From Stegostoma tigrinum (taxonomy: Eukaryota): a stretch of DNA of 64,000 nucleotides. Shown in pieces: positions 5,301 through 63,414 of the stretch. Location: the NCBI RefSeq assembly GCF_030684315.1, contig NC_081365.1, positions 39,268,985 to 39,332,984 on the forward strand. The letters are read 5' to 3'. The notes under the pieces were generated by a model. It did not search any database and was not told the DNA's origin. It saw only the letters and a list, made by a program, of their open reading frames with translations. How positions within the stretch are numbered: the stretch's first letter is position 1; each line of letters starts with the position of its first letter. The translations under genes were made by a program, and so were the position numbers.

Positions 5301-8300
5301 AGCTAGCTGTCAGAGTGAACAGAACCTCTGACACTTCTGTTCTTATCTGTCAGCCAAAGCTGCCTGATTGAGGCTGTTAATTTGCCCGTTCAATCTGGGA
5401 GCTCATATTCTTTGAGATCCACCTGGTTGACCTTGTTATAATCATCGCACCTGGTACTCGGAAAAAGACTTGTTTACTCCTACTCTTTGTTTCCTGTCTA
5501 CAAACAGTTCTTGATCCAATTTAGCATGCACTCTTCAATCCCATGTGCTTTAATTTTGCATGCTAATCTCTTATGCAATACCTTATCCAAAGTTACTGGC
5601 TCTAGGGGAGTCCAAAACTAGAAGGCATAGGTTTAAGGTGAAAGGGGATGGGACCCTTTCCACACAAAGGGTGGTGTGTATATGGAATGAGCTGCCAGAG
5701 GCTGTACCTTGTCCACGTTACTAGGCGCATCCTTGATGAATTCCAGCAGATTTGGAAGGGTGACTTCTCCTTCGTAAGCCCATATTGACTCTGTCTGATC
5801 CTGTCATTATTTGATGGTTGGCATGGCATAGTGAGATATCTTCAATGATTTATGGAGATCCTTTAGATCTACGCATACTCTCAGCTTTCCAGTTTAATTT
5901 GCTACTACTATGCTATCCTCATCAGATGCTGAGTTAGTCTTACACTCTTATTTATACCAAAATGACATTCACCAGGAAGATATAGTGTCATACAGCACAG
6001 GAACAGACCCTTCAGCCCAACTTGTCTGTGCTAATGCGGTTTCCTAAACTGAACTAGTCCCATTTGCCTCTGTTTGGTCCATATCCTTCTTAAACCCTTC
6101 CTATTCATGTACCTGTCCAAATGTCTTTTGAGTGTTGTAATTCTACCTGTCCCTACCACTACCACTGGCAGCTCGTTTCATATACACACCACCCTCTGTG
6201 TGGGAAAGTTGCCCTTCAGGTCCCTTTCCCCTCTAACCTTCAGCCTATGCCTTCTAGTTTTGGACACCCATACGTTGGGGAAAAGACCCTGGTTGAATGG
6301 CTTATCTCTACCCATTACGATTTTATAAGACTTTATAAGGTCATGCCTCAGCCTCCTACATTCCAAGGAAAAATCTCAGCCTATCCAGCCTCGTCAGACC
6401 AGTAACTGCATCCTTGTAATCTTCAAGGGCCTGTTCATCAGTCAATGGTTTGGTGGCCAGCAAAATATTGCAAATCAATTTTGGCAAATGTAGTGTTTTC
6501 AGTCCAATCAAATCAGCTGAGATAAATGGATTTTGCTTACTATCACTAACAGGTCTTCAATTTCCTCCCTGCTTTGTGCTCTCACCTTCATTTGTCCTCT
6601 TGGGATGGAAATTGTTCCATCACATAGCCTCAAACGTACCTTCAAAAGTTTCATGTTTCATGTTACCTTCTTGAGCAATCACACAAGTCCTCAAAACTCA
6701 TGCTGTTGCATAAAGTACTGGTGTCTATTTGGTGTTTCATATTCGTTTGATACTCTTCTTCTGCAGTCATCACTCTAATAACCACAACCAATTTAATATC
6801 TTTAGATCCGATGAAACCAACCTGTATTATGTTGTAGAGCAATTTATCAGAATAAACGGCTGACATCTCTCCAAAAGCCATCTGTACAGGCTTACTTTGC
6901 TTATTTCTAGCTAAACACTGCCATGTAAAGTGATTCAGCTTCCTGCAATGAAAGCATTGTTTCCCCAACACTGGATATGTATTTTTTTCTTTTGAATGGA
7001 GGCCTCTGCAATAATTAAATCCAGTTCTCAGGCCTTGATCATTCTGCTGGCTCTTGAACAAATATTTCTTCCTTTTTTCCAATATGTTGTTCTCATTTGA
7101 CTTGGACTATGAATCAATAAATGTGGAGCTAGAAAATCACAGCAGGTCAGACAGCATTTGAGGAGCAGGAGAGTCAATGTTTTGGGCCAAAAGCCTTCAT
7201 CAGGGCTGACGAATGATTTTGGCCCGAAACATTGATTTTCCTGCTTCTCGGATGATGCCTGACTTGCTGTGCTTTTCCGGCTCCACATTTATTGACTCTA
7301 GCTTCCAGCATCTGCAGTCCTTTGTGTCTCCATGATGTGGAATATGTCTTAGTGTAATGTAACGTTTTATCTATGCTCCCATTATTACACAAGATTGACT
7401 ACCTCAGAATTTCTGCACAAGTCAAGGGCTTTCTTGAGAATGAGTTTCTCTTCTCTCTTTTGATGTGCTTTCACATTGGGATCTCTTATGCCTAAAGCAA
7501 TCCTATCTCTGGTGAGATCATCTTTGAGTTGTCCAAACACTCAATATGGCAGCGCTATCACATACAGAACAACAGTGTCCCTCCCCTAAAGCTCTGATAT
7601 ACAACCGTACCATTCATTAGTATTATTGATGTGGGGTTTAAAGTGTGGTTTCAAACTCTCTCCTGTCTGAGTCTTCTTCTCAGTGCCATTTCAGGTGCAA
7701 TGGACTTAAGTAGCACTCGTTTCTCAGTATTGATAAGAGGGTTGTATCTCTTATTTGCCCAATTATGTTATTTAATTCTTTATCTATTTCATACTTCTGT
7801 GAGTGAGAGAAGAAACCAATTCTGTCTCCTCCATCATTTCCATAGGAGAAGGGATCAGAGAATTAACAGCCATTGTGATTCTTCCAGCACTTTAAAGTTG
7901 CAGACTGTGGTGATTTAATTCATCCTTATGTAAGTTTTCTTTTAACTGGAGCTGACTCTCTTGCAGGTCTGAAAATTCACTCAATTTCAACTGCACTGTT
8001 TTGATAGAGATAGTAGGAACTGCAGATGCTGGAGAATCTGAGATAACACGGTGTAGAGCTGGATGAACACAGCAGGCCAAGCAGCATCATAGGAGCAGGA
8101 AAGCTGATGTTTTGGGCCTAAATCCTAAGATCCTTCTTCTGAAGGCGGGTCTAGGCCGGAAACATAAGCTTTCCTGCTCCTATGATGCTGCCTGGCCTGC
8201 TGTGTTCATCCAGCTCTACACCGTGTTATCTTACACTCTTTTGACATCATGTTTTTAAGCAATTTATCTAATGGCTTCCACAAACTAAAATGAAAGCAAC

Positions 8301-11300
8301 CAACAGAAGATGTGGAGATCACATGACAATGGTAAGGTCACTAGTATATTACGTCCTAATGAATTTCTCCACGTAGGCCTCTGCAGGGTGCATTGATGGC
8401 TGCTAAATTGATTTCTGGTGGCTCAGCCTGATATGGAGAACCAATGGCCTCTAAATGGCCAGCAGTTCTCAGGGAAAAGAAGTGTCCTTGTTCCCAGGGA
8501 AGGTGGCCTGCTGGCCTCCCAAGTGGCCAAGGATGCAATGAGCATTCTCAAAAGTGGGTGACACAGTTCTCCACCTGTTCTGTTGGGCAAGGCCCTTATT
8601 GTCCAGATTAAATTCCACCAATAACCCCAGGACCTTCTTCTAGGTCCATATGCAACTTTTTTTTCCAAATTGAATCTTTTATTTTATATCACATGCAAGG
8701 TATTTGTTTAACAAGGTGTGGAGCTGGCTGAACACAGCGGGCCAAGCAGCATCAGAGGGGCAGGAAGGCTGACATTTTGGGACTAGATCCTTCTTTTCTG
8801 AAGAAGGGTCTAGGCCTGAAACGTCAGCCTTCCTGCTCCTCTGATGCTGCTTGGCCCGCTGTGTTCATCCAGCTCTATACCTTATTATCTCAGATTCTCC
8901 AGCATCTGCAGTTCCTACTATCTCTGAAACAAGGTATTTGTTTGGTAGCTTTGGAGCTGAATGGGGTCAATCAATCAGTTAACATATCAAATGAATCAAA
9001 TTTCTCACATCAGTTCTATCTCTGAATTTAAAGTCAAGAAAATGACAGCTAACACCAGGGTTCAAATGTAGAATGTGTAGCATACTGCTTGTGCACTTGT
9101 GCTACAAATAACACTGGCATGAAATCCCTTGGAAAATTTTAATTGACTTTAAAATATAATTAGATAGATTACTTCTGTCAGGGAAGAGAATATGTAAAAT
9201 AGTATTCTTCTTTGATCCTGAATGTTTCAAATTGTTAACATTGTTCAACACGCAAATTACTAAGTATCATGACATGCATTCAGTCCTCACTTTTCTCTCT
9301 CTTTTTAAAATTCTGTATTACTCTTTAAGCAACAAGACGGCATAGCTTCTGCCAATGCAGTTATCAAGTGAAATACATGGCTAGCACTCAGACCTTCACT
9401 TCTGTCTTGCTTGTGAGGCAACTAGCATCATTGCACAGAATATTTCTCACAAAGACAAAGTTGATTCAATACCTGGGCGCTGGACAGTGACAATGGTCTG
9501 CCCAGATGTGTCCTCTCCAATTTTATACCAGATGTTGTTGGGGCTTAGAAGCCATTCCTCCACATGACAATAGTATTTCCCACTATCATTAATGTTAGCT
9601 TTTAGTAAGACCAAGGTATAATGCCCAGTAAAAGGTTTTGCAACTTGCAGTCTCTCCTTCTTCTTGTCTCTTCCTAACCAGTCCTTGTGTTCAACCACAG
9701 AGTCACGGTTTGATTTGAGAATCAGCTTGTCAGCTTTCTCCAGTGATTTCTGAACGTGCCATTGCACAGAGAATTGAGAGTCTGGTCTTGTTTGATTTGT
9801 GATGTAGCAGTTTAAATGAATATTGTCATTTACTTTCACAACAATGTTCCTCTCTGCTTGATTGACTTTTAGTTTACATTCTGTAAGAGAAAAAAAGATT
9901 AGGTCACATATAGAGCAGTGGTAAATACAAAATAAAAACTAATTTAAAAAAAGCTTTTCTTTCTTTCATACATTTTAGCAACCACAATAGTCTGCATTCT
10001 GCAGTCAGCGGTGAAGTGACAACATTTTCTTGACATTAATTTGAATCTGCTGTCAAGTCAAGTGAATCTCCAGGTATCCAGCAACAGTAAGCTCACCAAG
10101 CAGAATCACCAGTCAATTGCATTGAAGTATTCTAATAGACAGCAAACTAAGAAGTAAATTGCACTGATTATTCCTCATAATGATACTTCACAGATAGCGA
10201 AAATAACTGAGTCATACATATGGGATTCAGGCAAAATCTCAATGATCATGGACAAGATGAACAAGCTGTGAAAAACATAAAAATGTGTCTTGTTTTATAT
10301 CACAATGGAGAAATTTGGCTTACCACAAGTATTACATCAGTTTTCCAGGGCCAGAATGGTTGGTCAGCAGCAATGATAAATCTGGTAGGCCAACAAAGCC
10401 CAGTTAGGCCTTGTTCAATATGACGGAACATTTTCAACGGTTTTAACACAAACCCAATGGCATAAAAAGGCAAGTTCTCATCAGTGATAACAAGGTGTAG
10501 AGCTGGGTGAACATAGCAAGCCAAGCAGCATCCGAGGAGCAGGAAAGCTGACATTTCGGGTCTAGGCCCTTCTTCAGAAGGGTCGTTTCAGAAGAAGGGT
10601 CTAGACCCGAAACGTCAGCTTTCCTGCTCCTCTGATGCTGTTTGGCCTGCTGTGTTTATCCAGCTCTACATCGTGTTATCTCAGATTCTCCAGCATTGGC
10701 AGTTCCTACTATCTCTGTAACAAATTCCCATCAGTGTTGTTATTTCTAATAGTTTTCAGTTAGGTGATTCTTTACTTTTGCTAACATGCCTTGTTAAAGT
10801 ATCATTCACAGCAATTACTGGATTTCCATGTTCAATTACAAACATGCAGACTCCAGAAATCGCTGTCAGTTTCAGAGGAGTATTTATGATGAATGCTGAC
10901 AGTTTTGTAATCACTATTGATTATTAAACATCATTATCCAAGTCATCTTCTTCTACAGCTGGAGCAAGGTCTTCACAAAAATCTGCACTGAGATAATTTA
11001 CTTCCAAGCAAGACAACTTTCTTCTCTACCTCATCTGTACATTCCTCTCAGTGCTTGCTACAGGATTACAGTGATTTAATTCACGTAGAGCAATCAACAG
11101 GGTTACAAAGATACTTTATAACTAATACTAAATAAAAACCAAAAGAACTGCGGATGCTGTAAATCAGGAACAAAAACAGAAGTTGCTGGAAAAGCTCAGC
11201 AAGTCTGGCAGCATCTGTGAAGAAAAGTCAGAGTTAAGGTTTCAGGTCTGGTGACCCTTTCCTCAGAATTAATATCACTTGGAAGACTTAACTTCGAAAG

Positions 11301-14300: not shown

Positions 14301-17300
14301 AAACTATACAGACAACAGATTACAGACAAAAGGGTTTAGAGAGTCTTGTGTGGTATACTCAGGCTGTTGAGAAGCACAATGAATCTACTACACATATTGA
14401 TTAATGGAGCTGAGTGGATCAGGCATACATTAATCAATAATATATTGCTGTACTATCCTGAGGTTTGTCTAATAAATGTCAGTGGTGTTCAGCTAGCAAA
14501 TGCTTTCACTCCAAGGACCATTGTAACATCCCTCAAACCATTTTGAAATTTAAAAATGTATCAGTTATTTCCAATTTTTAAAAACAATGCCTTTAATGTC
14601 TTCACATCATCTCTGCTTGCAGTTTCTAGCAGTGTATCATTACGGACATTTGAAATAGAACACAGTCTTCAAAAGGCGCCAGTCCAATTTACCACACATT
14701 CTGTACTCAGAGAACTTTATTTAATGCCTCATTTCTTAGACAAAAGCTAGACCTGGTATGATGAGTAAGTTTAGATTAATTAATATTTCGTTTACAGTAA
14801 GGATTAATGGCTGGAAAAAATGAAGTAAGAAATGAAATGAAAAAAAAATAAAGAAAGCATTGCTTTTTTCCTCTATTTCTACACATTGAAAAATAATAGG
14901 GTAAATATTCAAATATATGCAAGCTCTTGTTATGGAGCAATAAAAAGTAAAGGAGGGGAAGATCTAAAGGCATTATCTCCATTGGATTTTTACCTTTTTC
15001 CAGATTATCAAATGATTAATCTCTTACACACAAGTACGTGGACCCAGACTCAGATACCACAAACAGACAGACAGTTTGTACATATGACATGCAGGATCTG
15101 GAGTTCATGTTCCCTGACAGGTTTGTTTGAAGATGGTTTTGAGAATAACAGGTAAAATTTAGAGAATGGCCCTCCTGCTGCCCAGTGTAGCAGCTGGCAC
15201 ACAGCCTGGCTGTCTTTGGGCCTATTAAAGCACTTAAATGGCTAAATAATGACCAACTAAAGCAGTGACACAGTGGTTAGCACTACTGCCTCACCAGGGA
15301 CCTGGGTTTGATTCCAGCCTCAGTGACTGTCAGTGTGGAAATTATATATTCTCCAAGTGTCTGTGTGGGTTTCCACTGGGTGCTCTTGATTTTCCCGACT
15401 GTCCAGAGTTGTGCAGGCTAGGTGTGTTAGCCATTCTGAATTACCCATTGTGTCCAGGAATGTGCTGGTCAGGTTGATTAGCCATGATAAATCTGGGGTT
15501 ACAGCGATAGGATGGGATAAACTTTGGAAGTCGGTGGAAACCTGATGGACTGAATGGCCTCTACCTGCATTGTAGGGTTTCTATAAAGACCTCATCCTGC
15601 TGTTTATGGCATTTTAACAGTGGGGGAAGACTCATGCCATGAAGAAAGCCTGGTATCTTTGGCTGTAAAGCCTGAGAAAGTGATAGTGGTGGTGGTTTGA
15701 ATCTGGGGAGGGGTGTAGGTGTTGTAACCCACACCATGGGCTTCTTGAAGCTGACCCTCTCACGACTCCTTATCACCCCTTGGAGTGACAGATTGACACC
15801 TCTCATCAGAACCATTACCCTGGATCCTCAACCCAAAGGTACTGCTGGGTCTAGAAAGTTATCAGCTCCAGTTAGCTCTCCACTCTCTACGGAAGGACCT
15901 GCTCCCGAGGTGAGGGTGAAGTTAAAGTGATTAACTCTGTTTCAGTTTAAAATTGCTAATGGACAAATAAGGAAACAAGGTGAGTGAGAGTGGAAATTTG
16001 CCTGATTGAAACAAAGGCCAAAAGAGTATTCTCTGGGAATTTGGTTTGAAGTGGGAATTTGGCACTGAGGGAGAAATGGTATGCTTTAATTCTTCTCCAT
16101 TGTAAGATGTGAGCAGGATAGGATAGAAGGCTTGGATCAAAAAGCCTACATGCAGTGAGACGAATGGGCAAGTGACATCTGGAACAATGCGATGAGACTG
16201 CAGGGAAAGCAGCTACTTGGTAACTGGGATTGGTGAATATTTCTGGTTTTTCGAGTAAATGGAAGACCTTCAGTGTCTGTTTGGGTATTGAAACTATTTG
16301 TCTTTTGTTAAAAACAGTTTAGGATTGATACTAAAATGTGAGGCTGGATGAACACAGCAGGCCCAGCAGCATCTCAGGGGCACAAAAGCTGACGTTTCGG
16401 GCCTAGACCCTTCATCAGAGAGGATTGATACTGATGCTTTTAAGAAATAACTAAAATAATAATAAAAGGTATAATGAATAGGGATTCCTGAGTAATTAAT
16501 TCATAAATTAAATAAAATATAACTGTGGTGGCAGGACTGGTGATGTGTTGCTGCTCCAGCATGTGAGAGTTGCTGGACATCAGGGTGATCCAGGATGAAC
16601 ACATCTGTATCAAATGCTTCCATCCTGAGCAATTTTAGATCCAAAGTTGGGGAACTGGAGTCCAAATTAGATCACATTAGGGGAGGAAAAGTTACATGGA
16701 CACTTTGTTCCAAAAGACATAATGCTACTTCGGCTAGGTCATTTAAGTTCAAATGTGGTCTGTGATTAGGACAAAATAGTTTGTATGTGCACCACAATAA
16801 CCCCCTACCTGCATCCACCTATCACTATCCCACCTTCCCTCCCCCCCAGCCCCACCCCACTCCCTCTATTTATTTCTGGCCCCTGCAACTGTCCAACAGG
16901 TTCTTGGCAAACTATATGGATGAGAATGGGACTGCAGGGAGGCTGAACAAACTTACCACAACATTATGGCGCAGGAAACCATTCAAGTGGGGGTGGAAAT
17001 AGGAACGTAGTTGTGTTATGGGACAGTCTAATTAGGGGAATGGACACTATTCACTGTAACATGAGCATAAATTCCAAACTCTACTTTACTAGCCTGGTAC
17101 AAGGTTAACAACACCTCTTCAGGGTTGGAGAGGAACTTGGAATGGGAGGAGAGTGATCTAATTGTCATTGCCCATGTTTGGGAAAACAGATACCTAGGTT
17201 TTCAAAGCAAAAGGCTATAGCAACATTACAAGGCAGTTACTTGGATAATGATATGCAGAGTGGAATAGGAAGGTATACAATGTACAAACATAGAAAATTA

Positions 17301-20300
17301 GTGCCAAATAGGGAAAATGGGGAAAGAAAATGGCAAGAAAGATAAAATTAATGGCTCTTTACTTAAATTTACATAGCATTCAGAATAAACTAATGTTAGT
17401 AGTAGCACAAATTGAGATTAATAGGGTAACAATCATTACAGAGACATGGGTACAAGGACATTAAATCTAGGAACTAAATATTCATTGGTATATGGACTAA
17501 GGCAGTTGGTTAGCTCAGTTGTCTGGGCAGCTGGCTTGCAATGCAAAGTAATGCCAACAGTATGAGTTCATTTTCAGCACCAGCTGAGGTTACCATGAAG
17601 GATTGTCCTTCTCAACAACTCCCCTCATCTGAGGAGTGGTGATCTTCAGGTTAAACAACTACCAGTCATCTCACACTCAACACAAAGCAGCCTTATTGTC
17701 TGGTAAGAGTTTGGTACCTTTACATTTATCTGATATATGACTGTTCAAAAGAAAATACAGTAAGAAAGGAATGGTGTGGTCACTTTGGTTGTATGAGATA
17801 GAATAGGTATGATTGCAAGAAATGATGTTGGATTAGAAAATATAGACTCTGTATGTATGGAGATAAGAAATAATAACGGGAATAAAACACTGGTGGGAGT
17901 AGTCTCTAGGCTCCCTAACAATTGCTAATGACAAATACACTATGACAAATAATAAATGGAGAGTTAATGAGGGCATTAAACAGGCAGTATATTAATCATA
18001 GGTGATGTTAATCTTTGTGTAGATTGGAAAAAATCAAATTGGCAGAGGTAAAATTAATAGGAAGAATTAATAGGCCATATTTTAGACAGTTTTCGAGAAC
18101 AATGTGTCGCTGATTGAACTAGTGATCAGGCTATTTTGAATGTGTAATGAGGGAGGTACAATAAAAGATCTCAGAGTAAAAGATCCCTGAGGAAACAATA
18201 TCTATAACATGGTAAAATTTGGCATTCAATTTGAGTGTGAGAAACTTGAACAGAAACAAGTGTTAAATAAGATAATTACAAAGGAATGAATTCATAGTCG
18301 GATAAAATGAACTGAGAAATTAGAGTCAATAAATGTGGAGCTGAAAAAGCACAGCTGGTCAGACAGCATCAGAGGAGCAGGAAAGTCAACATTTTAGGCT
18401 GAAACCATTTGTCAGGACTATGGAGGGGGATAGGAGTCCAGACATAAATAGAGGGAGTGCAGTGGGGCTTGGGGGGAGGGTAGGTAGGATAGTGATAGGT
18501 GGATGCAGGTAGGGGGTTTTTGCGATTGGTCCGTGGGAAGGATGAAGCGTATAGGTGAGTAGGAAGATGGACAGGTTGGGGGTGGAGAGATTTTGAAGCT
18601 GTAATGCAGGCAGGGGGTTATTGTGGTTGGTGAGTTAGAAGGGTAGGAGTGGATTGCAGAGTCAGAAGATGGAAAGGTTGGGGGAGGAAAGAATTTGAAG
18701 CTGGTGGTCAGTATTCAGGCCATTGGGCTATAAGATCCTAAGGCAAAATATGAAGTGTTTTCCTCCAGTTTATGTTTGGCATCGCTGTGACAGTGGAAGA
18801 GGCCAAGAATGGAAATGTCACCAGAGGAGTTAAAGTGGATCGCAACCGGAAGGTTGGGTTGGTTGGTGCAGAGTCCAGATGCTCTGCAAACCAGTCCCCA
18901 AGTCTGTGATAATAAAATGTGAGGCTGGATGAACACAGCAGGCCAAGCAGCATCTCAGGAGCACAAAAGCTGACGTTTCGGGCCTAGACCCTTCATCAGA
19001 GAGGGGGATGGGGAGAGGGAACTGGAATAAATAGGGAGAGAGGGGGAGGCGGACCGAAGATGGAGAGTAAAGAAGATAGGTGGAGAGAGTATAGGTGGGG
19101 AGGTAGGGAGGGGATAGGTCAGTCCAGGGAAGACGGACAGGTCAAGGAGGTGGGATGAGGTTAGTAGGTAGATGGGGGTGCGGCTTGGGGTGGGAGGAAG
19201 GGATGGGTGAGAGGAAGAACCGGTTAGGGAGGCAGAGACAGGTTGGACTGGTTTTGGGATGCAGTGGGTGGGGGGGGGAAGAGCTGGGCTGGTTGTGTGG
19301 TGCAGTGGGGGGAGGGGACGAACTGGGCTGGTTTAGGGATGCAGTAGGGGAAGGGGAGATTTTGAAACTGGTGAAATCTCCCCTTCCCCTACTGCATCCC
19401 TAAACCAGCCCAGTTCGTCCCCTCCCCCCACTACACCACACAACCAGCCCAGCTCTTTCCCCCCCCACCCACTGCATCCCAAAACCAGTCCAACCTGTCT
19501 CTGCCTCCCTAACCGGTTCTTCTTCTCACCCATCCCTTCCTCCCACCCCAAGCCGCACCCCCATCTACCTACTAACCTCATCCCACCTCCTTGACCTGTC
19601 CGTCTTCCCTGGACTGACCTATCCCCTCCCTACCTCCCCACCTATACTCTCTCCACCTATCTTCTTTACTCTCCATCTTCGGTCCGCCTCCCCCTCTCTC
19701 CCTATTTATTCCAGTTCCCTCTCCCCATCCCCCTCTCTGATGAAGGGTCTAGGCCCGAAACGTCAGCTTTTGTGCTCCTGAGATGCTGCTTGGCCTGCTG
19801 TGTACATCCAGCCTCACATTTTATTATCTTGGAATTCTCCAGCATCTGCAGTTCCCATTAACCCCAGTCCCCAAGTCTGTGTTGAGTCTCCCTGATATAG
19901 AGGAGACCACATCAGGAGCAAGAGATTTAGCAGACAAAGTTAGATGAAATGCAGGTGACACTCTGTGGGATTTGGAAGGATTGTTTGAGGCCTTGGATGG
20001 AGGTGAGAGGGGAAGTTTAGGGGCAGGTGTAGCTCCTCCTGCGGTTGCAGAGAAAGGTACTGGGTGTGGTGTAGGGGTTGGTGGGGAGTGTGGAGCTGAC
20101 AACAAGAGCTTTAAATATATAAAAGGAACAAAAAGACTAAAAAGTGAACATAAGCCCCTTAGAGAATGAGGCTGAGGAAATAATAATTGGTGGACTATGA
20201 AATGAAACCATGAGGAACCGAATAAACACTTGGCATCAGATTTGATGGTAGGAAACACTTTTGGTATTACAAAATTAATAAATAATCAAGGGCACGAAGT

Positions 20301-29300: not shown

Positions 29301-32300
29301 CCTGATATTTCTAAAATCTATCTCCCTCCTCTTAATACTTTCAGTGATCTGAATACCACAACTCTCTAGGTTACAGAATTCCAGAGGCTTACTATCCTCT
29401 AGGAGTAGAAAATCCTTCCCACCTCAGTTTTAAATGAGTGTCCAATTATTCTTTATCTATGTTGAGATTTCTCCAATAGTGGAACATTCTTTTTAACATC
29501 TACCCTCTCAAGCTATCCCAGAAGCTTGTATGTTTCAATAAAGCCACCCTTCATTCTTTTAAATAAAGGCCTAGCCTGTCTAGTCATTCTTGATAAATCA
29601 ACACCTTCATCCCACAAATCAGACTTACAAATCTTTTTTGAAATGCCTCCAATACCAGAATCTCCTTTTTTAAATATGGGGACCATAAATGTACACCATT
29701 CTCCGGGTGCAGCCTCACAAACATTCTGTCCAATTGTAACAAGATTTCCCTATATTTAAATCTCATGTCATGAGCATAGTTGGAATATTAACTAGAAAAA
29801 GGAGCAAGCTCAGGGTTGGGATAGAAGGGTTCCTTAGAGGAAGTTTGGCTTGCTGGGCAAGTGGAAGGTAGGGAAATAACAGAGACAGCTGGTTGGATAG
29901 TCTCAAGTTCAGTGACAAATAAGTCCATGAGCGCCTTGCGCATGCTGTTCTATTATGTCACTGAGTCATTTGAGGTGCCAATGTGCAAAAGTTAGTTTGA
30001 TTTATTAGGAATGTATATTTAAAAAAAGCTTTCCATGACAGGTATCAACTCTACTCATTGAAAGAAATGATTATGCAATGGAAATGCAAAACAATGTACC
30101 ATAGTTTCCCTTTTGGAAGTGATGTTAAATTAATCGTTAATAAAATGAAAGTAAACGTTGAAATCATAACTTGCCACCATTTCTCAGAATGTGTTGATGC
30201 TCAGCTTAAGTGCCTTTCTGTAGAGTATTTAGGGATCAAAAATTAAAAATCAATCAACAGCGCAGATTAAAATCATTAGTGAATTGTATTGTGAAGAACT
30301 TTCCTCAAGTGTGGGAGGAATGAAACAGGGTATTGTGTCCATTATTCTAATCAACACAACTGTGAAAAATGATATATATTTAATAAGTGTCAAGTAATCT
30401 GATCTTGGTAGAAAGATGACCTGTGTGGAAATTGAAAATTTAATATTAATAGTTTATAAATAATTCATACATTTATAAAAAAAAATTAAATATTCAATTC
30501 AGATTCTATTTTAATTTAGAACAGAAAATGTGAATAACTCTCAGCAAGCCAGGTTATATCTGTGGCGAGAGCAGACCAGTTAATATTTCAGAGTGGATTC
30601 CTTCATCAGAGCTGGAAGGTATTAAAGATGAATAACATTAGTAGCACTCTCATCTCTGAGTTAGAAAGCTGTGAGTTGAAGCCTGCTTCAGTAAGTTAAA
30701 CCTTTTGTCTAGCTGATGTGGCAATGCAGTGTCAGGGAACTCTGCATAGTTACAGATGCTGTCTTTTGAATGAGACATTAAAAGGAGCCCTGTCTACCCC
30801 TTTCAAGATGTCACGGCATCATTCACAGGAAAGCAGAAAACTTCCCTCAGTGCCCTGAACAGTACTTATCTTTTGAATACAAATATAAAAATAAAAGACA
30901 GTGCAGATGTCGGAAAGATGAGATAGCATCAAAAACATTCCGAAAGGATTCTGGTGAACGGTCATAAACCTGAAGGTTAACTCTCTTATCTCCTGCTGAT
31001 TTTAGCATACTTCCTTGCATACTTTGTTGTTCTTATCCCTCAGGGAATATGGTTGTTATCATTGCTCTGCTTGAGAGACCTGGTTTGATGCAAATTGGCT
31101 GCTGCATTTCTTATGTGGCAGCAGTAAAATGGATGAAAATAAGGAAAAGAGAAACAGGATAAATGAATGGCAAGACATCGCAAGCAGGAAAAAAAACTGA
31201 ACAGCCTGCAGAAAGTTGATGTTGGGAATAGTGATCATAATGTATGATTAAGAATTGTCAAGATGTACGTACAAAATGCAATAGCATGCCAGTGTCATGA
31301 TGTGGAAAGGTTTTGCTGAAACTCAAAGGAAGAATTTACAAGAATATTATGAGACTTATTACATAATGTAGAAATTTGGGCAACAGAAAAAAATAAGGAA
31401 CAGCATCAAGTGGTTGAGTAGAAAATTAAATGATACAATTGTCTATTGCAGACTGAGAGAGGAAATAAGTTGAGACAAACGGTAGGGATGGGTTGCTGGC
31501 AAGAAGACTAGGATGCCCACATCTACGTGGAAGGATATGGTGGCAACAGACTTAGACACAGTGGGATTGGAAGAGTAATGAATGGCTGACAGGAGGAGAT
31601 GCAGAAGATGATCAACTAGCATTGTGATAACCTCATCTAAACTGGGAGAAGCAGACAGGTGACTAGCTAATTTTCTGAAGAAGGGTCTAGGCCCGAAACG
31701 TCAGCTTTCCTGCTCCTCTGATGCTGCTTGGCCTGCTGTGTTCATCCAGCTCTACACCTTGTTATCTCTGACTAGCTAAAGGGATGGGATTAGCCACCTG
31801 GATAGGGAATCGTTAAAAAACAGGTTGCAAGGGATCCAATAGCCTTACAGAAGAAGACACAAGTAAGCTCCAAGAAACAGTTTACACTTCTGCCACTTGG
31901 AAATAAATGTGTGGAGTGAATGGTCTACCTGTTAGACCTCTTGCCACACCATTCATCAAGCTCCTGAACCATTACAGCTTGCTCACTTTTCTAGTTGTTA
32001 AAACTGCTATTTTCACTTTACTCTTGATAATCCACTTGAACAACTTACTAGTTATTCCATTTCTTTTCTTGTGTCTGTGTGCTCACACTCTTTTTGTTCC
32101 TTCACCTTCCCTTTGGTTTATCCCTTCTGAGATAATCCTTATCTAAGACAGATTCCAGTTCTGACGGTGTGTGCCTTCTGCAGGTGTTGCCTAACTTGCT
32201 GAAGACTTCCAGGATTTCCACAGAACTATATCTGCAGCCATGCTATGGAGCAGCAGTCAGAAGACCACAAAGATCCAAACTGATCCTGATGCTGCAACAT

Positions 32301-55157: not shown

Positions 55158-57432
55158 AATTGTGGGAAGAATAGCTGTAGGAAATATAGGGTTACAGTGA
55201 TAGGGTAGGCATGTGGATCTGGGTGGGAAGCTCTTCGGAGGTCAGTGTGGCCTCAATTGGCCAAATGACCTGCTTCCACACTAGAGGGCTTCTATGATTC
55301 TATAATTACGGACCAAGACCCCACTCCCAAAAATGTAAGGAGAAACTTAATAACCTCACCAATGCAGCAAGAGAATGCAACAAGCCAATTAAGTACCCTG
55401 CCAAATTCCTGATGCCTTTAGAGAAAAGTCAACATTGCTCAATGTTGAGGTTAACCTCACTGGAAAGTCACATTGTTCCATGTACAAGGAAACCTCTTTG
55501 CCTCAGACCTGTCTGTTTAACATTCCCTCACATCTTGCAATGCATGCTGACCCTTTGAAACCTGTCTCCAACGTTTCATTCTTCTATTTCACTGCACACT
55601 GACAGTCAAATGAGATAAGCATCAGAGTGCTATTGCTATTTAATATTTATGAATTCTTCTTTGAGTAGAAGTTGGCATACGATGACACAGAGCAGCAGGC
55701 CACAGACAGAGATCTCCAATGCACCAAGCAAATGACTAAGTTAGAGGACAAGACCACACCTACCTAGGGAATAACATTTCTCAGACTGGAAAACCTGGAA
55801 GCTGTGAGTTCAAAATCAGTTTGGGATGCAGAATTATTGTACTGGAGACTTTAGTTAAAGAAATAGAGACAAAACATACAGAGCGTGTGACTAAAAGACA
55901 ATGAGGATAGCAAGGAGTGACAGCAGAAATCTAGTAGTGCAAGCTTTTCTTCTATTCCTTCAGAATTATGAAGCTATGAGGTGAGAAATGGTAAAAATTA
56001 AGCTGACAGTGGCCTTGCACTCTCCCATTGCCCATCACTTTCATTATGACCAGCCAGAGTCAAGTGTTTGGTAATCAGGAACATGCTTCAGATGGTGAAC
56101 TGTTATTGAGTTAATTACTGAGCTCAAAGACTCTAAGGGTTTAATGTTTGATAACAGAGTGGAGTGGAGTAAACTGAATGAAGGCCAAGGTAGTATCACT
56201 GCTAAACAAGCTGCTGGTTTCAGCTTTTATGCTGCTGGGCCTGCTGTGTTCATCCAGCCTCACATTTCATTATGCTGGTTTCCTCTACAGGTTTTGCCGC
56301 AAGAAATGAACATCTTGCATGATTGGACTGTTCATTGATTTAGCAAATAAATCCCAATGTGTGCCCTACAGCCCTATCTGAATGGACTTGATGTAGACAG
56401 TGGTGGCATTTCTAATGTCTGCAATATTAACTTGTAGCATCCAATGCCTTCTCAATGGGAGGGCTAATTATTGGCCACCCAACTTTGGGGGATCATATGG
56501 AGATAACAATGACTCGTGGATTCTGAATCCAAAGCAACAATTTGAGTGCTTACAGGGTAACTAGTACAGGTTTTGATCAAGTCAGTTTTTCCATCTGTCA
56601 TGGGGCAGTAGAATTCCATTCTTGGTTCAGGTGGAAGTACAGCAGATTACACTAATATAGTGGTAGAAAGATGGAAAGTCTTTTTTTCTGTGTGGGCCAC
56701 CACAAGAGACTAAGCCAAGCCAGTTCTGGGTGTATTTGCAGCCAGAGTTAGTGCTATGTCTTTCCATCATACACTTCCATCATAACCAATGCCTCCCTTT
56801 TAACTCAAGCAGGACAAGATACTTCTTCCCACCCCACACACTGATGTATCCACAATCCTGAATGATCTACTCACATTCTCCAGACTGGTGGCACAATATC
56901 TACAGGGCTGATTGTGGTCCAGTCCCTGGACTCTGGTATGACGATGTGCTGAACTGACTATTTGACTAGAATCACATGCCCGCTAACTGCCTGTGGTGGT
57001 ACTACCTGTTTGGTTGCAGTCCCCCTTCAGTGAGGTCTGCATCATCTTGAGTGCCTGGCATCGTCATTTGTTCGAAACGCATGTGTTTGTTATGTAAACT
57101 ACTGACACTTGCAACATTGAAATGGGTATATGGTACCACTTCCTTGGCTATTCAATGTTCCCCACTGTCAAAAGCTGCCTACTTCATCCTCTGTGGTAAA
57201 AGGAAATGCAAGCAACAGAAGCTGGTAGCCTTGTAACTGAATACTAAAGACCATGAGCAGTTGAAAGCTATATGACCAAAAGACAGAGGCTGGTAGCCTG
57301 TAAATCAGTGCTGAATTAAGTGAGTGTGGGCTAAGAAAGCCATGTGAAGAATACAGAATGTGAGCGACTCCAAAGTGAACAGATGCTAATAATGGAAGCC
57401 AAAAGCCATAAGACGAATCCTGCGTAGATGCA

Positions 57433-59617
57433 AGATAATAAAGTGTGAAGCTGGGTGAACACAGCAGGCCAAGCAGCATCTCAGGAGCACAAAAGCTGAC
57501 CTTTCGGGCCTAGACCCTTCATCAGAGAGGGGGATGGGGAGAGGGAACTGGAATAAATAGGGAGAGAGGGGGAGGCGGACCGAAGATGGAGAGTAAAGAA
57601 GATAGGTGGAGAGAGTATAGGTGGGGAGGTAGGGAGGGGATAGGTCAGTCCAGGGAAGACGGACAGGTCAAGGAGGTGGGATGAGGTTAGTCGGTAGGAA
57701 ATGGAGGTGCGGCTTGGGGTGGGAGGAAGGGATAGGTGAGAGGAAGAACAGGTTAGGGAGGCAGAGACAGGCTGGGCTGGTTTTGGGATGCAGTGGGGGG
57801 AGGGGAAGAGCTGGGCTGGTTGTCTGATGCAGTGAGGGGAGGGGACGAACTGGGCTGGTTTTGGGGTGCGGTGGGGGAAGGGGAGATTTTGAAGCTGGTG
57901 AAGTCCACATTAATACCATAGGCTGCAGGGTTCCCAAGCGGAATATGAGTTGCTGTTGCTGCAACCTTCAGGTGGCATCATTGTGGCACTGCAGGAGGCC
58001 CATGATGGACATGTCATCTAAAGAATGGGAGGGGGAGTTGAAATGGTGCGCGACTGGGAGGTGCAGTTGTTTATTGCGAACCGAGCGGAGGTGGTCTGCA
58101 AAGCGGTCCCCAAGCCTCTGCTTGGTTCCCCCAATGTAGAGGAAGCCACACCGGATACAATGGATACAGTATACCACATTGGCAGATGTGCAGGTGAACA
58201 TCTGCTTGATGTGGAAGGTCATCTTGGGGCCTGGGATAGGGGTGAGGGAGGAGGTGCGGGGGCAAGTGTAGCACTTCCTGCGGTTGCAGGGGAAGGTGCC
58301 GGGTATGGTGGGGTTGGAGGGCAGCGTGGAGCGAACAAGGGAGTCACAGAGAGAGTGGTCTCTCCGGAAAGCAGACAAGGGTGGGGATGGAAAAATGTCT
58401 TGGGTGGTGGGGTCAGATTGTAGATGGCGGAAGTGTCGGAGGATGATGCGTTGTATCCGGAGGTTGGTGGGTTGGTGTGTCAGAATGAGGTGGATCCTCT
58501 TTGGGCAGTTGTGGCGGGGACGGGGTGTGAGGGATGTGTTGCGGGAAATGCGGGAGACGCGGTCAAGGGTATTCTCGACCACTGTGGGGGAAAGTTGAGG
58601 TCCTTGAAGAACTTGGACATCTGGGATGTGCGGGAGTGGAATGCCTCATCCTGGGAGCAGATGTGGCGGAGGCGGAGGAGTTGGGAATAGGGGATGGAAT
58701 TTTTGCAGGAGGGTGGGTGGGAGGAGGTGTGCTCTAGGTAGCTCCGTGACTCCCTTGTTCGCTCCAAACTGCCCTCCAACCCCACCACATCCGGCACCTT
58801 CCCCTGCAACTGCAGGAAGTGCTACGCTTGCCCCCACACCTCCTCCCTCAACCCTATCCCAGGCCCCAAGATGACTTTCCATATTCAGCAGAGGTTCACC
58901 TGCACATCTGCCAATGTGGTATACTGTATCCATTGTATCCGGTGTGGCTTCCTCTACATTGGGGAAACCAAGCGGAGGCTTGGGGACCGCTTTGCAGAAC
59001 ACCTCCGCTCGGTTCGCAATAAACAACTGCACCTCCCAGTCGCAAACCATTTCAACTCCCCCTCCCATTCTTTAGATGACATGTCCATCCTGGGCCTCCT
59101 GCAGTGCCACAATGATGCCACCCAAAGGTTGCAGGAACAGCAACTCATATTCCGTTTGGGAACCCTGCAGCCCAATGGTATCAATGTGGACTTCACCAGC
59201 TTCAAAATCTCCCCTTCCCCCACTGCATCCCAAAACCAGCCCAGCCTGTCTCTGCCTCCCTAACCTGTTCTTCCTCTCACCCATCCCTTCCTCCGACCCC
59301 AAGCCGCACCTTCATTTCCTACCTACTAACCTCATCCCACCTCCTTGACCTGTCCGTCTTCCCTGGACTGACCTATCCCCTCCCTACCTCCCCACCTATA
59401 CTCTCCTCTCTACCTATCTTCTTTTCTCTCCATCTTTGGTCCCCCTCCCCCTCTCTCCCTATTTATTCCAGAACCCCCACCCCATTCCCTTCTCTGATAA
59501 GGGTCTAGACCCGAAACGTCAGCTTTTGTGCTCCTGAGATGCTGCTGGGCCTGCTGTGTTCATCCAGCTTCACACTTTGTTATCTTGGATTCTCCAGCAT
59601 CAGCAGTTCCCATTATC
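57433..59617. mobile_element. Neptune-type PLE inverted dimer: minus arm 57433-58740, plus arm 58742-59617, both containing GIY-YIG endonuclease sequence
   Basis: CNRRKCYTC linker, NVVYCIHC..CGFLYIG(E)TKRRLGDRFAEH...VANHFN...GIN. 14-bp TSD cctgcgtagatgca (57419-57432, 59618-59631). 32-nt tail on the right arm. Confidence 0.92.
58871..59263 (+). pseudogene. Open GIY-YIG endonuclease domain of a 5'-truncated PLE (no RT)
   Basis: 130-aa ORF with VVY..YIGET..RL..R..EH..E...N catalytic-type motifs. Confidence 0.8.
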
Positions 59618-60484
59618 CCTGCGTAGATGCATATGTCTGTCCCTGTGCGTAAAGGGCCTTGAGAGAAACATGCAGGCAATTGCTGTCCCTGAGCTCCAAA
59701 GTCAAGTGTTGTTGGGATGTAGTGGTGTATGAATTACAACCAACAAGATGAGACTGGTTGTTTGTCCATGGGGACCTTGGTAGACAAAGTGTTGAGGAGG
59801 ATCGTGCCCATGCAGCGTAAAATGGAATATTGTTGAGAGGAAGCATTCTGGGCACTGGCTGGCACAAGCATTTGAGGAGCTCACAAATTCTCTTCATCTT
59901 TTCATTCCTTTCATTCCTCTCTCACCATGCCTCATCAGGGAGGGGAATAGTTTTCCCAAAGATTTCAAACATTTTCGTTACTAATAGTTTCTTTGCGCAC
60001 TTCACTTACTCCCATGTTTTAAAGGCTGACTGAGCAGCACAGCGATTCTCTTTGCATGTGTTTGTTGACAAGCAATGCTGCATACTTCAGTGAAGGAGTA
60101 CCAAATAAACAACAGTTGCATCTTTCCAGTTTTGTTGATTCGTCTGCTTTCTCATACTCTTCATGTTCTCCCTCCATGGGATCACCATCTGTATTGCAAT
60201 CAGTCTCTAGTGTAACAAATTGGAGGTCTCACTGGGTTAAAAAGTACTGCAACACATAATAGACAGGGGCGTACCAGAGGGGCTTGCATTAAATATCCAG
60301 GCATCTGAACCTTTCTTTCAGCACTCTTATGTTTGCACAATGGAATTGTTTCAAGTGAGCTTCACCATATCATTCATCCACTGCACTGAACCATGAAAAA
60401 CACAAACAAAATTTATCTCCAAGGAGCCTTTGCAGTGAAAAAATAACAAAGATTTATGGATCTGGAAATCAGAATCTGATTATC

Positions 60485-62374: not shown

Positions 62375-62940
62375 AAAACCAAAAGAACTGCAGATACGGT
62401 GAATCAAGAACAAAAACAAAGTTGCTGGAAAAGCTCAGCAGATCTGGCAGCATCTGTGGAGGAGAAAACAGAGTTAACGTTTCAGGTCCGGTGACCCTTC
62501 CTCAGAACTGATGGTGGCTGGGAAAACATCAGTTTATTTGCAGAAAATAAGGAGGTGAGTGGGGTAGGGAGTAAACGATAGAATAGAGCCCAAAGAGACA
62601 AAAAGACAGTTGAACAGACAAAGTTGATGCTAACGATCAGGTTGGGAGGGGGAATAGTTGTTAATGGGGACTGTTAGTGACTAGCAACAGGAAACATGTA
62701 GTGGCAGGCTATGTGGTAACGAGGCCCGGTGTGTGGGGTGGGGGACTGGGACATAGGGGTGTTTAAGGCCCGAAAATTATTGAACTTAATATCAAGTCCC
62801 GAGGTCTGAAGGGCCCCCAAGTGGAAAATGAGGTGTTGTTCCTCCAGCTTGCGCTGGGCTTCACTGGAACACTGTAGCAAGCCAGAGACAGAGATGTTGA
62901 CCAGGGAACAAGGTGGTGCATTGAAGTGGCAGGCAACAGT
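62375..62940 (-). mobile_element. PLE (family C) 3' fragment: GIY-YIG C-terminus, 3' UTR and hammerhead (62472-62507)
   Basis: VACHFNAPPCSLVNISVSGLLQC...KLEEQHLIFHLG. Hammerhead ttctgaggaagggtcaccggacctgaaacgttaa. Confidence 0.8.
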
Positions 62941-63414
62941 TTTGCGAGCAGAACATTCAATGCACAATCCACAGCTGTAATCCACAAGACCTCCATCTAT
63001 ATCCATGCAACCTAGAAAAGCCTGAAATCGTGTCCAATTGTCTACTGTGTGCAACTAGCTTAAACAGCAGAACACTGCTTCCCTGCATGTTCTAACAGTG
63101 AAGAGGAATTCATACCTTTTAAAGATATTAACAGTGCATAATACCGCAGAGAGCTGCAACAGATGGCAATCTCTCAAACAAGCTGTCATATCTGATGAGC
63201 AAAGGAAAATTGCAGCTATTCTTTACAATGAGCTCATTCTGGGTGGCAGGGACAGGCAACTAAAGAGGGGATATGACAACAATAAACAACTGTTTTTCTT
63301 CATTGTTATTCTATTGTGACTGATCTCAAATGTTAGCAAACTACATCACAAGACCCTCAGGTGATTCCTCCCATTGTAAGTTACATGTCTATCCTATTTG
63401 TTATTAAACCAAAC

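What the first reader, a model, noticed from the sequence alone, without database searches (positions are those of the whole stretch)
7111..10736. Four ~220-bp palindromic mini-elements built from two head-to-head hammerhead ribozyme units
Seen: the elements at 7111, 8007, 8710 and 10487 share one plan, an inverted ~90-bp arm and a direct arm joined at the 5' edge of the CUGANGA core. A ~33-38 nt tail sits on one arm only, and three of the four have long TSDs (14-16 bp). They come from two sequence families (A and B). Established: PLE terminal repeats carry minimal hammerheads and PLE insertions can be inverted. Inference: this is a discrete non-autonomous retro-mobilised class that resembles a MITE but is made of two copies of a ~90-nt ribozyme-headed unit, mobilised in trans by Neptune RT/GIY-YIG. 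I cannot tell whether it is already catalogued.
Basis: partly seen in the sequence, partly recalled or inferred. Interest (0 to 1): 0.8.

Follow-up and report, generated by a model that had tools for sequence, protein, structure and literature searches.

The report
Palindromic Penelope retrotransposon insertion stubs
The four ~220-bp palindromes are real, but they are very short head-to-head insertion stubs left by Penelope-like retrotransposons, a published insertion pattern; the one unexplained point is that their inner ends stop exactly at the start of the hammerhead ribozyme motif.

Summary
Observation confirmed. Elements at 7110-7332 (family A), 8006-8233, 8710-8929 and 10487-10721 (family B) are palindromes of two ~90-nt arms. 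Each arm begins at a minimal-hammerhead core (CUGANGA..GAAACGUY). One arm per element carries a 36-41-nt tail. TSDs are 12, 14 and 15 bp; none for A.

Interpretation partly supported. The arms are the 3'-terminal module of Penelope-like elements (PLEs). The same window holds 0.96-kb and 2.2-kb head-to-head PLE insertions with the same one-sided tail and 11-17-bp TSDs, one encoding GIY-YIG. Inverted 5'-truncated copies, a one-sided tail, two RT start sites and priming on both DNA strands are published (Craig 2021; Frangieh 2024). Junction sequences differ between elements, so each palindrome formed at insertion; I found no sign of a self-copying MITE-like class. The arms lack the helix I 5' strand, so they are not complete ribozymes.

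Residual: 7 of 13 insertions across four families end within 5 nt of the core start, and contigs of three shark species show the same single boundary. A TATA-like box ~34 nt upstream suggests, untested, that the units copy the mRNA leader from cap to RT start site.

The scan noted this before elsewhere in this genome, and one follow-up reached the same reading.

The parts
7110..7332 (.). Family-A palindromic stub. Left arm 7111-7203 is antisense and tail-less. GG lies at the centre. Right arm 7206-7298 is sense, followed by the tail to ~7332. No TSD found.
   Evidence: (I7, 83% complementary)
8006..8233 (.). Family-B stub 1. Tail 8006-8041 and antisense arm to ~8138, with a 7-nt internal duplication. 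Sense tail-less arm 8139-8233. TSD 7994-8005 / 8234-8245 (10 of 12 identical).
   Evidence: (I5, 90%)
8710..8929 (.). Family-B stub 2. Antisense tail-less arm 8710-8793, TTTT 8794-8797, sense arm 8798-8889, tail 8890-8929. Perfect 14-bp TSD CAAGGTATTTGTTT at 8696-8709 / 8930-8943. The RNA would fold as a near-perfect hairpin (-161 kcal/mol, z = -19).
   Evidence: (I8, 89%)
10487..10721 (.). Family-B stub 3. Antisense tail-less arm 10487-10577, 8-nt filler AAGGGTCG (a short re-copy of the unit, the mark of a template switch), TTT, sense arm 10589-10680, tail 10681-10721. TSD 10472-10486 / 10722-10736 (13 of 15 identical).
   Evidence: (I3, 87%)
31671..31769 (+). Solo family-B unit, tail-less: TTTT + CTGAAGA..GTTATCTCT. 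Perfect 10-bp TSD GACTAGCTAA. Zero branch length in the unit tree, so it is close to the B consensus.
16333..16420 (-). Solo family-C unit, tail-less, starting CT + CTGATGA. Perfect 12-bp TSD AGTATCAATCCT.
11134..11266 (-). Solo family-D unit with tail, starting at CTGAGGA. A TSD is possible but imperfect.
18908..19863 (.). Young family-C head-to-head insertion. Arms are 455 nt and 99% complementary, with an 11-nt spacer. The left arm is tail-less and the right arm has the tail. Perfect 17-bp TSD CCAGTCCCCAAGTCTGT. It is inserted into an older family-A PLE copy (18321-20102, minus strand).
57431..59618 (.). Asymmetric family-C head-to-head insertion. The tail-less minus-strand arm runs 57431-58741 and the tailed plus-strand arm 58742-59618. 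Perfect 11-bp TSD CTGCGTAGATG. Both arms encode a GIY-YIG endonuclease preceded by a Cys cluster.
63414..63608 (+). Solo family-C copy with tail, 5'-truncated ~66 nt upstream of the core.
62375..62505 (-). 3' unit plus tail of a longer family-D copy. The only copy besides A_18415 with a 4-bp helix I (AGUU/AACU).
56222..56273 (+). 52-bp solo family-C fragment that starts at the nucleotide after GUC, the predicted hammerhead cleavage site. Perfect 9-bp TSD GCTGGTTTC.

Best explanation
The four palindromes are dead-on-arrival by-products of PLE integration.

A PLE ribonucleoprotein nicks both target strands 9-17 bp apart. Each 3'-OH primes reverse transcription of the 3'-terminal recognition module of PLE RNA. 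One cDNA starts at the inner RT start site (..GTTATC, no tail). The other starts at the outer site ~36-41 nt downstream (tail). Both run to the same RNA 5' end. The two antisense cDNAs are then joined head-to-head by microhomology and template switching, giving a palindrome flanked by a long TSD.

The stubs are short because the template effectively ended 0-4 nt upstream of the hammerhead core.

Shown here: the anatomy, the TSDs, the one-tail rule, the two classes of 3' end, the non-random 5' boundary, and the de novo junctions.

Taken from papers: nicking and extension of both strands, two RT start sites, and a predicted protein dimer.

Inferred:
- Both arms come from one RNA molecule or one source locus (about 0.6).
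- The 5' boundary is the mRNA start, set by a TATA-like box ~34 nt upstream, so the units copy the mRNA leader from cap to first RT start site (about 0.45).
For: - Same plan at all sizes. All six head-to-head insertions in the window (four ~220-bp stubs, one 0.96 kb, one 2.2 kb) have exactly one tailed and one tail-less arm and 11-17-bp TSDs where a TSD is found. The chance of 6 of 6 mixed pairs is <=0.016.
- GIY-YIG endonuclease is encoded in the long family-C copy. Relatives are found in Chiloscyllium, Leucoraja, Heptranchias and Rhinoraja.
- Published match. PLE insertions have an adjacent inverted 5'-truncated copy and a 30-40-bp tail at one end (PMC8557442). The Anolis PLE protein cuts and extends both strands and starts RT at two sites ~34 nt apart, ~85-119 nt downstream of the hammerhead (PMC11167929). 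The shark unit has the same geometry: ~95 nt plus ~36 nt.
- Minimal-hammerhead hallmarks are present: an extra nucleotide after A9, the G10.1-C11.1 pair, a palindromic ACGU, and N7 that varies among families.
- De novo formation. The centres of the three B stubs differ, and one holds an aborted re-copy. The arms of one element share 3, 2 and 1 private variants, against a mean of 0.4 between elements, and pair in the tree.
- Discrete 5' end. 7 of 13 insertion events in four families end within 5 nt of the core start (P ~3e-12). In Logan contigs of the source species and two relatives, place 19736 is the only loose-end peak with long (median 115-255 nt), heterogeneous flanks (agreement 0.36-0.38; 714, 728, 145 and 68 contigs). 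Summed depth also steps up 2.6-4.3-fold there.
- TATTTAT lies at -35/-34 in long A and C copies, and AAATAAA at -34 in D.
Against: - No RNA data. All runs were contigs or bisulfite DNA, so a transcription start at the core edge is unproven.
- In D. virilis Penelope the start site is 46-121 nt upstream of the hammerhead and the promoter is TATA-less.
- No long family-B copy is in the window (4 of 4 are stubs), so a separate short source RNA for B is not excluded.
- The read-laying output warns that contig depth cannot rank parts of a sequence, and it printed only the best-supported loose ends and joints.
- A recurrent opposite-strand joint (19736/19773) in several contigs of all three species could mean that some palindromes were copied as such.
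- Element A has no TSD.
Confidence: 0.8

Rival explanations
1. One reading: a discrete non-autonomous class. The ~95-135-nt ribozyme-headed unit would be its own short RNA, a SINE-equivalent for PLEs. It, or the palindrome itself, would be repeatedly mobilised in trans by PLE RT/EN.
For: - A sharp 5' end is shared by four families.
- All four family-B copies in the window are stubs, and three of them carry the same TTT(T) before the core.
- The unit region is 2.6-fold or more over-represented relative to the upstream sequence in contigs.
- A recurrent opposite-strand joint appears in contigs of three species.
Against: - The centres of the palindromes differ, so no palindromic master was copied.
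- The stubs contain nothing upstream of the unit, and in the Anolis system the RNA must extend beyond the tail for activity.
- Families A, C and D have long copies with the same unit as their 3' end.
- The same architecture occurs with 455-nt and ~1-kb arms.
Confidence: 0.12
2. The 5' boundary is not an RNA end. It is a place where the RT leaves the template, at the edge of the protein-bound, folded hammerhead module, and switches to the other cDNA.
For: - The Anolis protein binds the module downstream of the hammerhead and helps the ribozyme fold.
- Template-switch scars lie at the stub centres.
Against: - Solo units with no partner arm stop at the same place (31671, 16420, 11266).
- In vitro the Anolis enzyme copies to the end of 5'-extended templates.
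- Long copies read straight through the site.
Confidence: 0.25
3. The inverted arm arises by snap-back. A single cDNA folds on itself at the RNA 5' end and copies itself, without a second priming event on the other strand.
For: - Arms are symmetric in five of six head-to-head insertions.
- Arms of one element share private variants.
Against: - The self-copied arm should be able to run through the tail, yet 6 of 6 second arms stop at ..GTTATC +/-3, the position where tail-less solo copies also end.
- The 2.2-kb insertion has arms of 1309 and 877 nt that abut directly, with the tail-less arm the longer.
- Extension of both strands was seen in vitro.
Confidence: 0.15
4. They are DNA-transposon MITEs, or hairpin RNA (miRNA-like) genes.
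For: - The palindromic shape.
- Sub-threshold Rfam matches to long plant miRNA hairpin models.
- A very stable predicted hairpin.
Against: - TSD length varies from 9 to 17 bp and the ends are asymmetric.
- Every miRNA match is below its gathering score and reflects hairpin shape alone.
- The arms are diverged at the level expected of old, decayed repeat copies (83-90% complementary), with CpG decay.
Confidence: 0.02

Closest known systems
Penelope-like element insertions with an adjacent inverted 5'-truncated copy and a one-sided 30-40-bp tail (Evgen'ev & Arkhipova 2005; Craig et al. 2021, PMC8557442)
   Same: Head-to-head copies, a tail at one end only, variable long TSDs, the hammerhead in the terminal repeat, heavy 5' truncation, and insertion into older PLE copies.
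   Different: Here both copies are cut down to the last ~95-135 nt, so nothing but the terminal module remains. The truncation point is not random but fixed at the ribozyme's 5' edge.
Poseidon element of Anolis carolinensis studied in vitro (Frangieh et al. 2024, PMC11167929)
   Same: Two RT start sites ~34 nt apart that define the tail. The distance from hammerhead to start sites is ~85-119 nt. Both DNA strands are cut and extended. Hammerhead cleavage is not needed for insertion.
   Different: It is another PLE clade and host. In Anolis the hammerhead overlaps the ORF start, whereas the shark unit has no ORF start. The paper does not describe a 5' boundary at the ribozyme edge or mini-palindromes.
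Minimal hammerheads of metazoan PLEs (Cervera & de la Pena 2014, PMC4209133)
   Same: Core CUGANGA/GAAA/UH, an extra nucleotide after A9, G10.1-C11.1, and a palindromic 15.2-16.2 that implies action as dimers. Thousands of dispersed copies were attributed to truncated PLEs. Pairs on opposite strands ~100-700 bp apart were noted in Schistosoma mansoni.
   Different: In the shark stubs the 5' strand of helix I is missing or limited to 2 pairs. The Schistosoma pairs were not analysed as insertion units with TSD and tail.
LINE-1 twin priming and 5' inversions
   Same: The second nicked strand also primes reverse transcription, and the two cDNAs are joined by microhomology.
   Different: LINE-1 twin priming copies different parts of one RNA and gives an inversion. 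Here both cDNAs copy the same terminal module and give a true palindrome.
Retrozymes and Schistosoma SINE-like hammerhead elements
   Same: Short non-coding retro-mobilised sequences that carry a hammerhead.
   Different: Those have complete, active ribozymes in direct repeats or behind their own promoter and act through circular or processed RNAs. The shark stubs have incomplete ribozymes in inverted orientation.

Membership tests
Penelope-like element (PLE) insertion | Family encodes RT plus GIY-YIG endonuclease | tested here: inconclusive
   GIY-YIG was found (22.6 bits, equal to the Pfam cut-off) in the 2.2-kb family-C copy that ends in the same unit. Homologues occur in sharks and skates. 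No PLE RT lies in the window, and no long family-B copy either.
Penelope-like element (PLE) insertion | Adjacent inverted 5'-truncated copy | tested here: met
   Six head-to-head insertions with arms of 87-1309 nt.
Penelope-like element (PLE) insertion | 30-40-bp tail at only one end; two classes of 3' end | tested here: met
   6 of 6 head-to-head insertions have one tailed and one tail-less arm. The ends fall at ..GTTATC +/-3 or 36-41 nt further on.
Penelope-like element (PLE) insertion | Variable-length target site duplication | tested here: met
   TSDs of 9, 10, 11, 12, 12, 14, 15 and 17 bp. None was found for element A.
Penelope-like element (PLE) insertion | Minimal hammerhead motif in the terminal repeat | tested here: met
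   7 exact motif matches against 0 expected. The extra A after A9, G10.1-C11.1 and palindromic ACGU are all present.
Functional hammerhead ribozyme | Conserved core and helix II | tested here: met
   Helix II is paired in 89.5% of cells. The core is intact in the younger copies and decayed in several arms of the four elements. There is no two-sided covariation in helix II and no excess over shuffles.
Functional hammerhead ribozyme | Helix I of 4 bp or more, formed with the sequence 5' of CUGANGA | tested here: not met
   In the stubs the 5' strand is absent or gives at most 2 pairs. Only the long A and D copies have 4 bp.
Functional hammerhead ribozyme | Match to a curated model; self-cleavage | tested here: not met
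   No Rfam hammerhead match at gathering score or at E<=10. Cleavage itself cannot be tested with these tools. One 52-bp solo copy begins at the predicted cut site.
Neptune clade of PLEs | Extra Zn-finger-like Cys motif in the RT-EN linker; placement in the RT phylogeny | tested here: inconclusive
   FPCNRRKCYTCP / FPCNCRKCYACP lies just before the GIY-YIG domain, which fits the description quoted. No RT sequence and no tree.
MITE (non-autonomous DNA transposon) | Fixed-length TSD and symmetric terminal inverted repeats | tested here: not met
   TSD length varies from 9 to 17 bp, and one end carries a tail that the other lacks.
Self-copying palindromic family | Copies share one centre and shared left-versus-right differences | tested here: not met
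   There are three different centres in three B stubs, and arms cluster by element. The sample is only four elements.
Retrozyme / hammerhead circRNA element | Direct repeats with complete ribozymes flanking the unit | tested here: not met
   The units are inverted and the ribozymes incomplete.

The most novel reading that the evidence does not exclude
The ~95-135-nt unit, above all family B, is a true non-autonomous lineage. It would be a discrete short RNA with its own 5' end at the ribozyme's edge, the PLE counterpart of a SINE. It would outnumber its autonomous partner, and its twin-primed copies would seed the genome with thousands of perfect intronic hairpins that could feed small-RNA pathways.
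Probability: 0.12. Interest if true: 0.65.

Novelty: new member of a known kind. Interest (0 to 1): 0.35.

Why it matters
The stubs are a natural record of how PLEs integrate in vivo in a vertebrate. They show priming on both strands, one tailed and one tail-less start per insertion, microhomology joins, and run-off at a fixed RNA position. That agrees with, and extends, the single in vitro study available.

If the fixed 5' end is the transcription start, most PLE reverse transcription in these sharks would be wasted on the mRNA's own leader. That would explain why dispersed 'orphan' minimal hammerheads vastly outnumber full PLEs in animal genomes.

In practice, these abundant palindromes will confuse repeat annotators (as MITEs or miRNA hairpins) and short-read assemblers, so they should be catalogued as PLE stubs.

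Tried and rejected
- Rfam, at gathering score over the whole window and at E<=10 over 6900-11000, gave no ribozyme family. The only hits were sub-threshold miRNA hairpin models that reflect the palindrome.
- Counting pairs on the hammerhead structure gave no covariation beyond shuffles, because the window holds too few independent lineages.
- RNAalifold proposed a tail to GAUGCUG-box helix, but with no covariation support.
- Read laying was used on the long family-C arm (19300-20400), not on the four elements. It gave the genome-wide boundary but nothing on empty sites, and all runs were contigs, so RNA ends and expression could not be read.
- The empty-site test for the four loci was therefore not done.
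I could not fetch full-length shark PLE copies to see whether their 5' ends also sit at the core start.
- The Lunse et al. 2017 paper is not held. Dfam and Repbase are not available here, so 'already catalogued' could not be checked directly.
- Literature searches for shark PLE hammerheads and for PLE mini-palindromes found nothing specific.
- A hammerhead-cleavage origin of the 5' ends was considered and rejected: the cut site is 28 nt downstream of the observed boundary.
- A join centred on the helix II palindrome was also rejected, because both core copies are retained at the centres.

Full report
**The observation**

The region holds four palindromes:
- 7110-7332: arms 83% complementary.
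- 8006-8233: 90%.
- 8710-8929: 89%.
- 10487-10721: 87%.

Each consists of an antisense arm and a sense arm of about 90 nt that meet head-to-head. A BLAST of the four against the window, followed by a motif scan, found the same ~95-nt unit at thirteen further arms or solo copies. The units fall into four families:
- A: 7110 and 18415.
- B: the other three elements and 31675.
- C: 16418, 18999/19737, 57525/59494, 63480 and 56222.
- D: 62505 and 11266.

Every unit begins with CTGANGA, one extra A, a 4-5-bp hairpin, GAAAC, and GTC or GTT. The pattern CTGANGA-N10-16-GAAACGTH occurs 7 times against 0.00 expected in shuffles.

Only one arm of each element carries the 36-41-nt tail (TCAGATTCTCCAGCATCTGCAGTTCC..ATCTCTG). 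The other arm stops at ..GTTATC, give or take 3 nt.

TSDs are 12 bp (10 of 12 identical), 14 bp (perfect) and 15 bp (13 of 15 identical). Element A has none.

**Is it a hammerhead?**

The motif has the features that Cervera and de la Pena list for the minimal hammerheads of metazoan PLEs:
- the G10.1-C11.1 pair;
- a palindromic 15.2-16.2 (ACGU), which implies helix III forms between two molecules.

N7 is C/U, A, U and G in families A to D. Helix II is paired in 89.5% of cells.

Three points limit this:
- There is no two-sided covariation in helix II, and nothing exceeds the shuffle controls in this small sample.
- No Rfam hammerhead model matches.
- Only the two innermost helix I pairs are usually possible. 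Just the long A and D copies have a 4-bp helix I immediately 5' of the core.

The stubs end at that point. Their arms therefore carry a ribozyme core without its 5' strand, not two complete ribozymes. In a transcript, the palindrome would fold into a near-perfect hairpin (-161 kcal/mol, z = -19).

**What the surroundings show**

The same window contains the same architecture at larger scale.
- At 18908-19863, two 455-nt family-C arms (99% complementary, 11-nt spacer) lie head-to-head. The left arm is tail-less and the right arm tailed, between perfect 17-bp TSDs. This insertion sits inside an older family-A PLE copy, whose sequence continues across it with the duplicated 15-17 nt.
- At 57431-59618, a tail-less minus-strand arm of 1309 nt abuts a tailed plus-strand arm of 877 nt, between perfect 11-bp TSDs. 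Both arms encode a GIY-YIG endonuclease (22.6 bits, at the Pfam cut-off) preceded by a C-x4-C-x2-C cluster.
- Relatives of this ORF are found in Chiloscyllium, Leucoraja, Heptranchias and Rhinoraja.

The four elements lie in introns between Ig V-set exons on the minus strand.

**Comparison with the literature**

- Craig et al. 2021 describe PLE insertions as heavily 5'-truncated, often with an inverted 5'-truncated copy directly adjacent, and with a 30-40-bp tail at only one end.
- Frangieh et al. 2024 show that a purified Anolis PLE protein cuts and extends both DNA strands. It starts reverse transcription at two internal RNA sites whose spacing (~34 nt, at about +85 and +119 from the AUG that overlaps the hammerhead) defines the tail. 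Hammerhead cleavage is not needed.
- The shark unit has the same geometry: about 95 nt from core to the first class of 3' ends, and 36-41 nt more to the second.
- In families B and C, both 3' boundaries lie at a repeated TATCT motif.
- Cervera and de la Pena had already noted pairs of minimal hammerheads on opposite strands ~100-700 bp apart in Schistosoma, and thousands of dispersed motifs attributed to truncated PLEs.

**Formed at insertion, or copied as palindromes?**

- The centres of the three B stubs differ: CTTCTT|CTGAAG; CTTC|TTTT-CTGAAG; and CTTCAG + AAGGGTCG + TTT-CAGAAG.
- The 8-nt filler in the third repeats the unit's own GAAGGGTC. It is what a 3'-terminal AGAA annealed to TTCT of a second cDNA would produce, so it looks like an aborted template switch.
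- The two arms of one element share 3, 2 and 1 private variants, against a mean of 0.4 for arms of different elements. They pair in the tree for two of three elements.
- All six head-to-head insertions have exactly one tail (P <= 0.016 if the start site were chosen independently).
- The unequal arms of the 2.2-kb insertion, and the constant stop of the tail-less arm at ..GTTATC, fit two separately primed cDNAs better than snap-back of one cDNA.

Taken together, each palindrome was made at its own insertion. The most likely source is one RNA, or RNAs from one locus, copied from the two start sites onto the two nicked strands. The one-RNA step is inference.

**The residual: a fixed 5' end**

Seven of 13 insertion events end within 5 nt of the C of CUGANGA:
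- the four stubs;
- the solos at 31671, 16420 and 11266.

The other six are at about -66, -364 and -826/-1216, two long copies, and one at the cut site. For a 10-nt target in ~1300 nt this gives P ~3e-12.

I laid Logan contigs of the source species (two samples) and of two related species on the long family-C arm 19300-20400.
- About 190,000-205,000 contigs of the source species matched.
- Place 19736, the base before CTGATGA, is the only listed loose-end peak whose unmatched parts are long (median 115-255 nt) and heterogeneous (agreement 0.36-0.38, A-rich, ending in TTT). It appears in 714, 728, 145 and 68 contigs.
- The other listed places have 8-19-nt unmatched parts with 0.63-0.98 agreement, which marks subfamily variants.
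- Summed depth rises 2.6-4.3-fold at that point, though the tool warns that contig depth is a poor measure.

The boundary is not the hammerhead cut site, which lies 28 nt downstream. Only one 52-bp solo copy (56222-56273, perfect 9-bp TSD) begins there.

**A possible cause**

Long A and C copies carry TATTTAT at -35/-34 relative to the core, and D carries AAATAAA at -34. With the usual spacing of ~30 nt between a TATA box and the start site (general knowledge), transcription would begin at about -5 to -3. The observed ends are at -4 (B, TTTT), -2 to -5 (C), -2 (D) and -1/0 (A).

In D. virilis Penelope the start site is 46 nt upstream of the intron, whose 3' end abuts helix I, and the promoter lies in the pseudo-LTR. 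In Anolis the hammerhead overlaps the start codon. A hammerhead close to the mRNA 5' end therefore fits known PLE layout.

On this reading the stubs copy the mRNA leader, from the cap to the first RT start sites. That would explain why stubs coexist with randomly truncated long copies, which would be primed at the distal module.

This is inference, at about 0.45. It lacks RNA evidence, and the Drosophila promoter is TATA-less. The alternative is an RT stop or switch at the edge of the protein-bound module. Solo units and in vitro run-through make that less likely, but it is not excluded.

**Verdict**

The elements are PLE-derived and retro-mobilised, but they are insertion stubs of a published architecture, not a new MITE-like class. 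A self-propagating short lineage, especially family B with 4 of 4 stubs and a shared TTT(T), remains possible at about 0.12.

The scan had already noted these palindromes in other parts of this genome, and one follow-up reached the same reading. I treated those notes as leads and tested the claims here.

Not done:
- Empty sites for the four loci.
- Any RNA evidence.
- A look-up in Dfam or Repbase.

Noticed in passing
window 56213-56282: A 52-bp solo family-C fragment (56222-56273) with a perfect 9-bp TSD GCTGGTTTC. It starts at the nucleotide after GUC, the predicted hammerhead cleavage site; a 2-nt microhomology (TC) leaves the boundary uncertain by 2 nt. It has an 11-nt internal deletion. 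It may be a rare copy of a self-cleaved RNA, and it is the only hint of in vivo cleavage in the window.
   Followed up: partly
window 19703-19709, 18449-18455 (minus strand), 62533-62539 (minus strand): A/T-rich heptamers lie 34-35 nt upstream of the hammerhead core in long copies of three families: TATTTAT in C and A, AAATAAA in D. This is the spacing of a TATA box for a start site at the unit's 5' end. A subfamily consensus from a related species keeps TATTTAT while the sequence after it differs.
   Followed up: partly
window 8840-8850 with 8899-8912, and the same columns in 8 copies: The tail's CAGCATCTGCAG is complementary to the conserved AGATGCTG box and to CTGC inside the unit, in families A-C. 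There is no covariation, so this may be an RNA fold around the RT start sites or a coincidence of conserved boxes.
   Followed up: partly
window 8884-8892 and 8918-8926; likewise 19822-19830 and 63569-63577 / 63600-63608: The two classes of 3' end (tail-less and tailed) both fall at a repeated TATCT motif about 36 nt apart in families B and C. The RT may start at a duplicated short signal.
   Followed up: no
window 18321-20102: An old family-A PLE copy on the minus strand (EN-region similarity 65-71% to family C, tail-less 3' end at 18321). It is split by the young 956-bp family-C palindrome, and its own sequence supplies the 17-bp TSD. This fits the reported tendency of PLEs to insert into PLEs.
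   Followed up: yes
window 19736/19773 (joints): An opposite-strand joint between the core start and a point 36 nt inside the unit recurs in 6, 6, 4 and 1 contigs of the three species. These may be orthologous copies, or a palindrome type that was itself amplified.
   Followed up: no
window 8042-8233, 8710-8889, 10487-10680: In all three family-B stubs the tail-less arm has the longer branch in the unit tree (0.063 vs 0.036; 0.13 vs 0.037; 0.086 vs 0.049). Families A and C do not show this. It may be noise or lower fidelity of one of the two syntheses.
   Followed up: no
window 1971-2414, 9450-9938, 38743-39216, 42688-43176 (minus strand): Ig V-set domain exons of a multi-Ig-domain host gene. 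All the PLE stubs described lie in its introns.
   Followed up: partly
window 53137-54159 (minus strand): A 341-aa open frame with an RVT_1 reverse-transcriptase match (32 bits). No PLE unit lies at its 3' side, so it is probably an unrelated LINE-type element.
   Followed up: no
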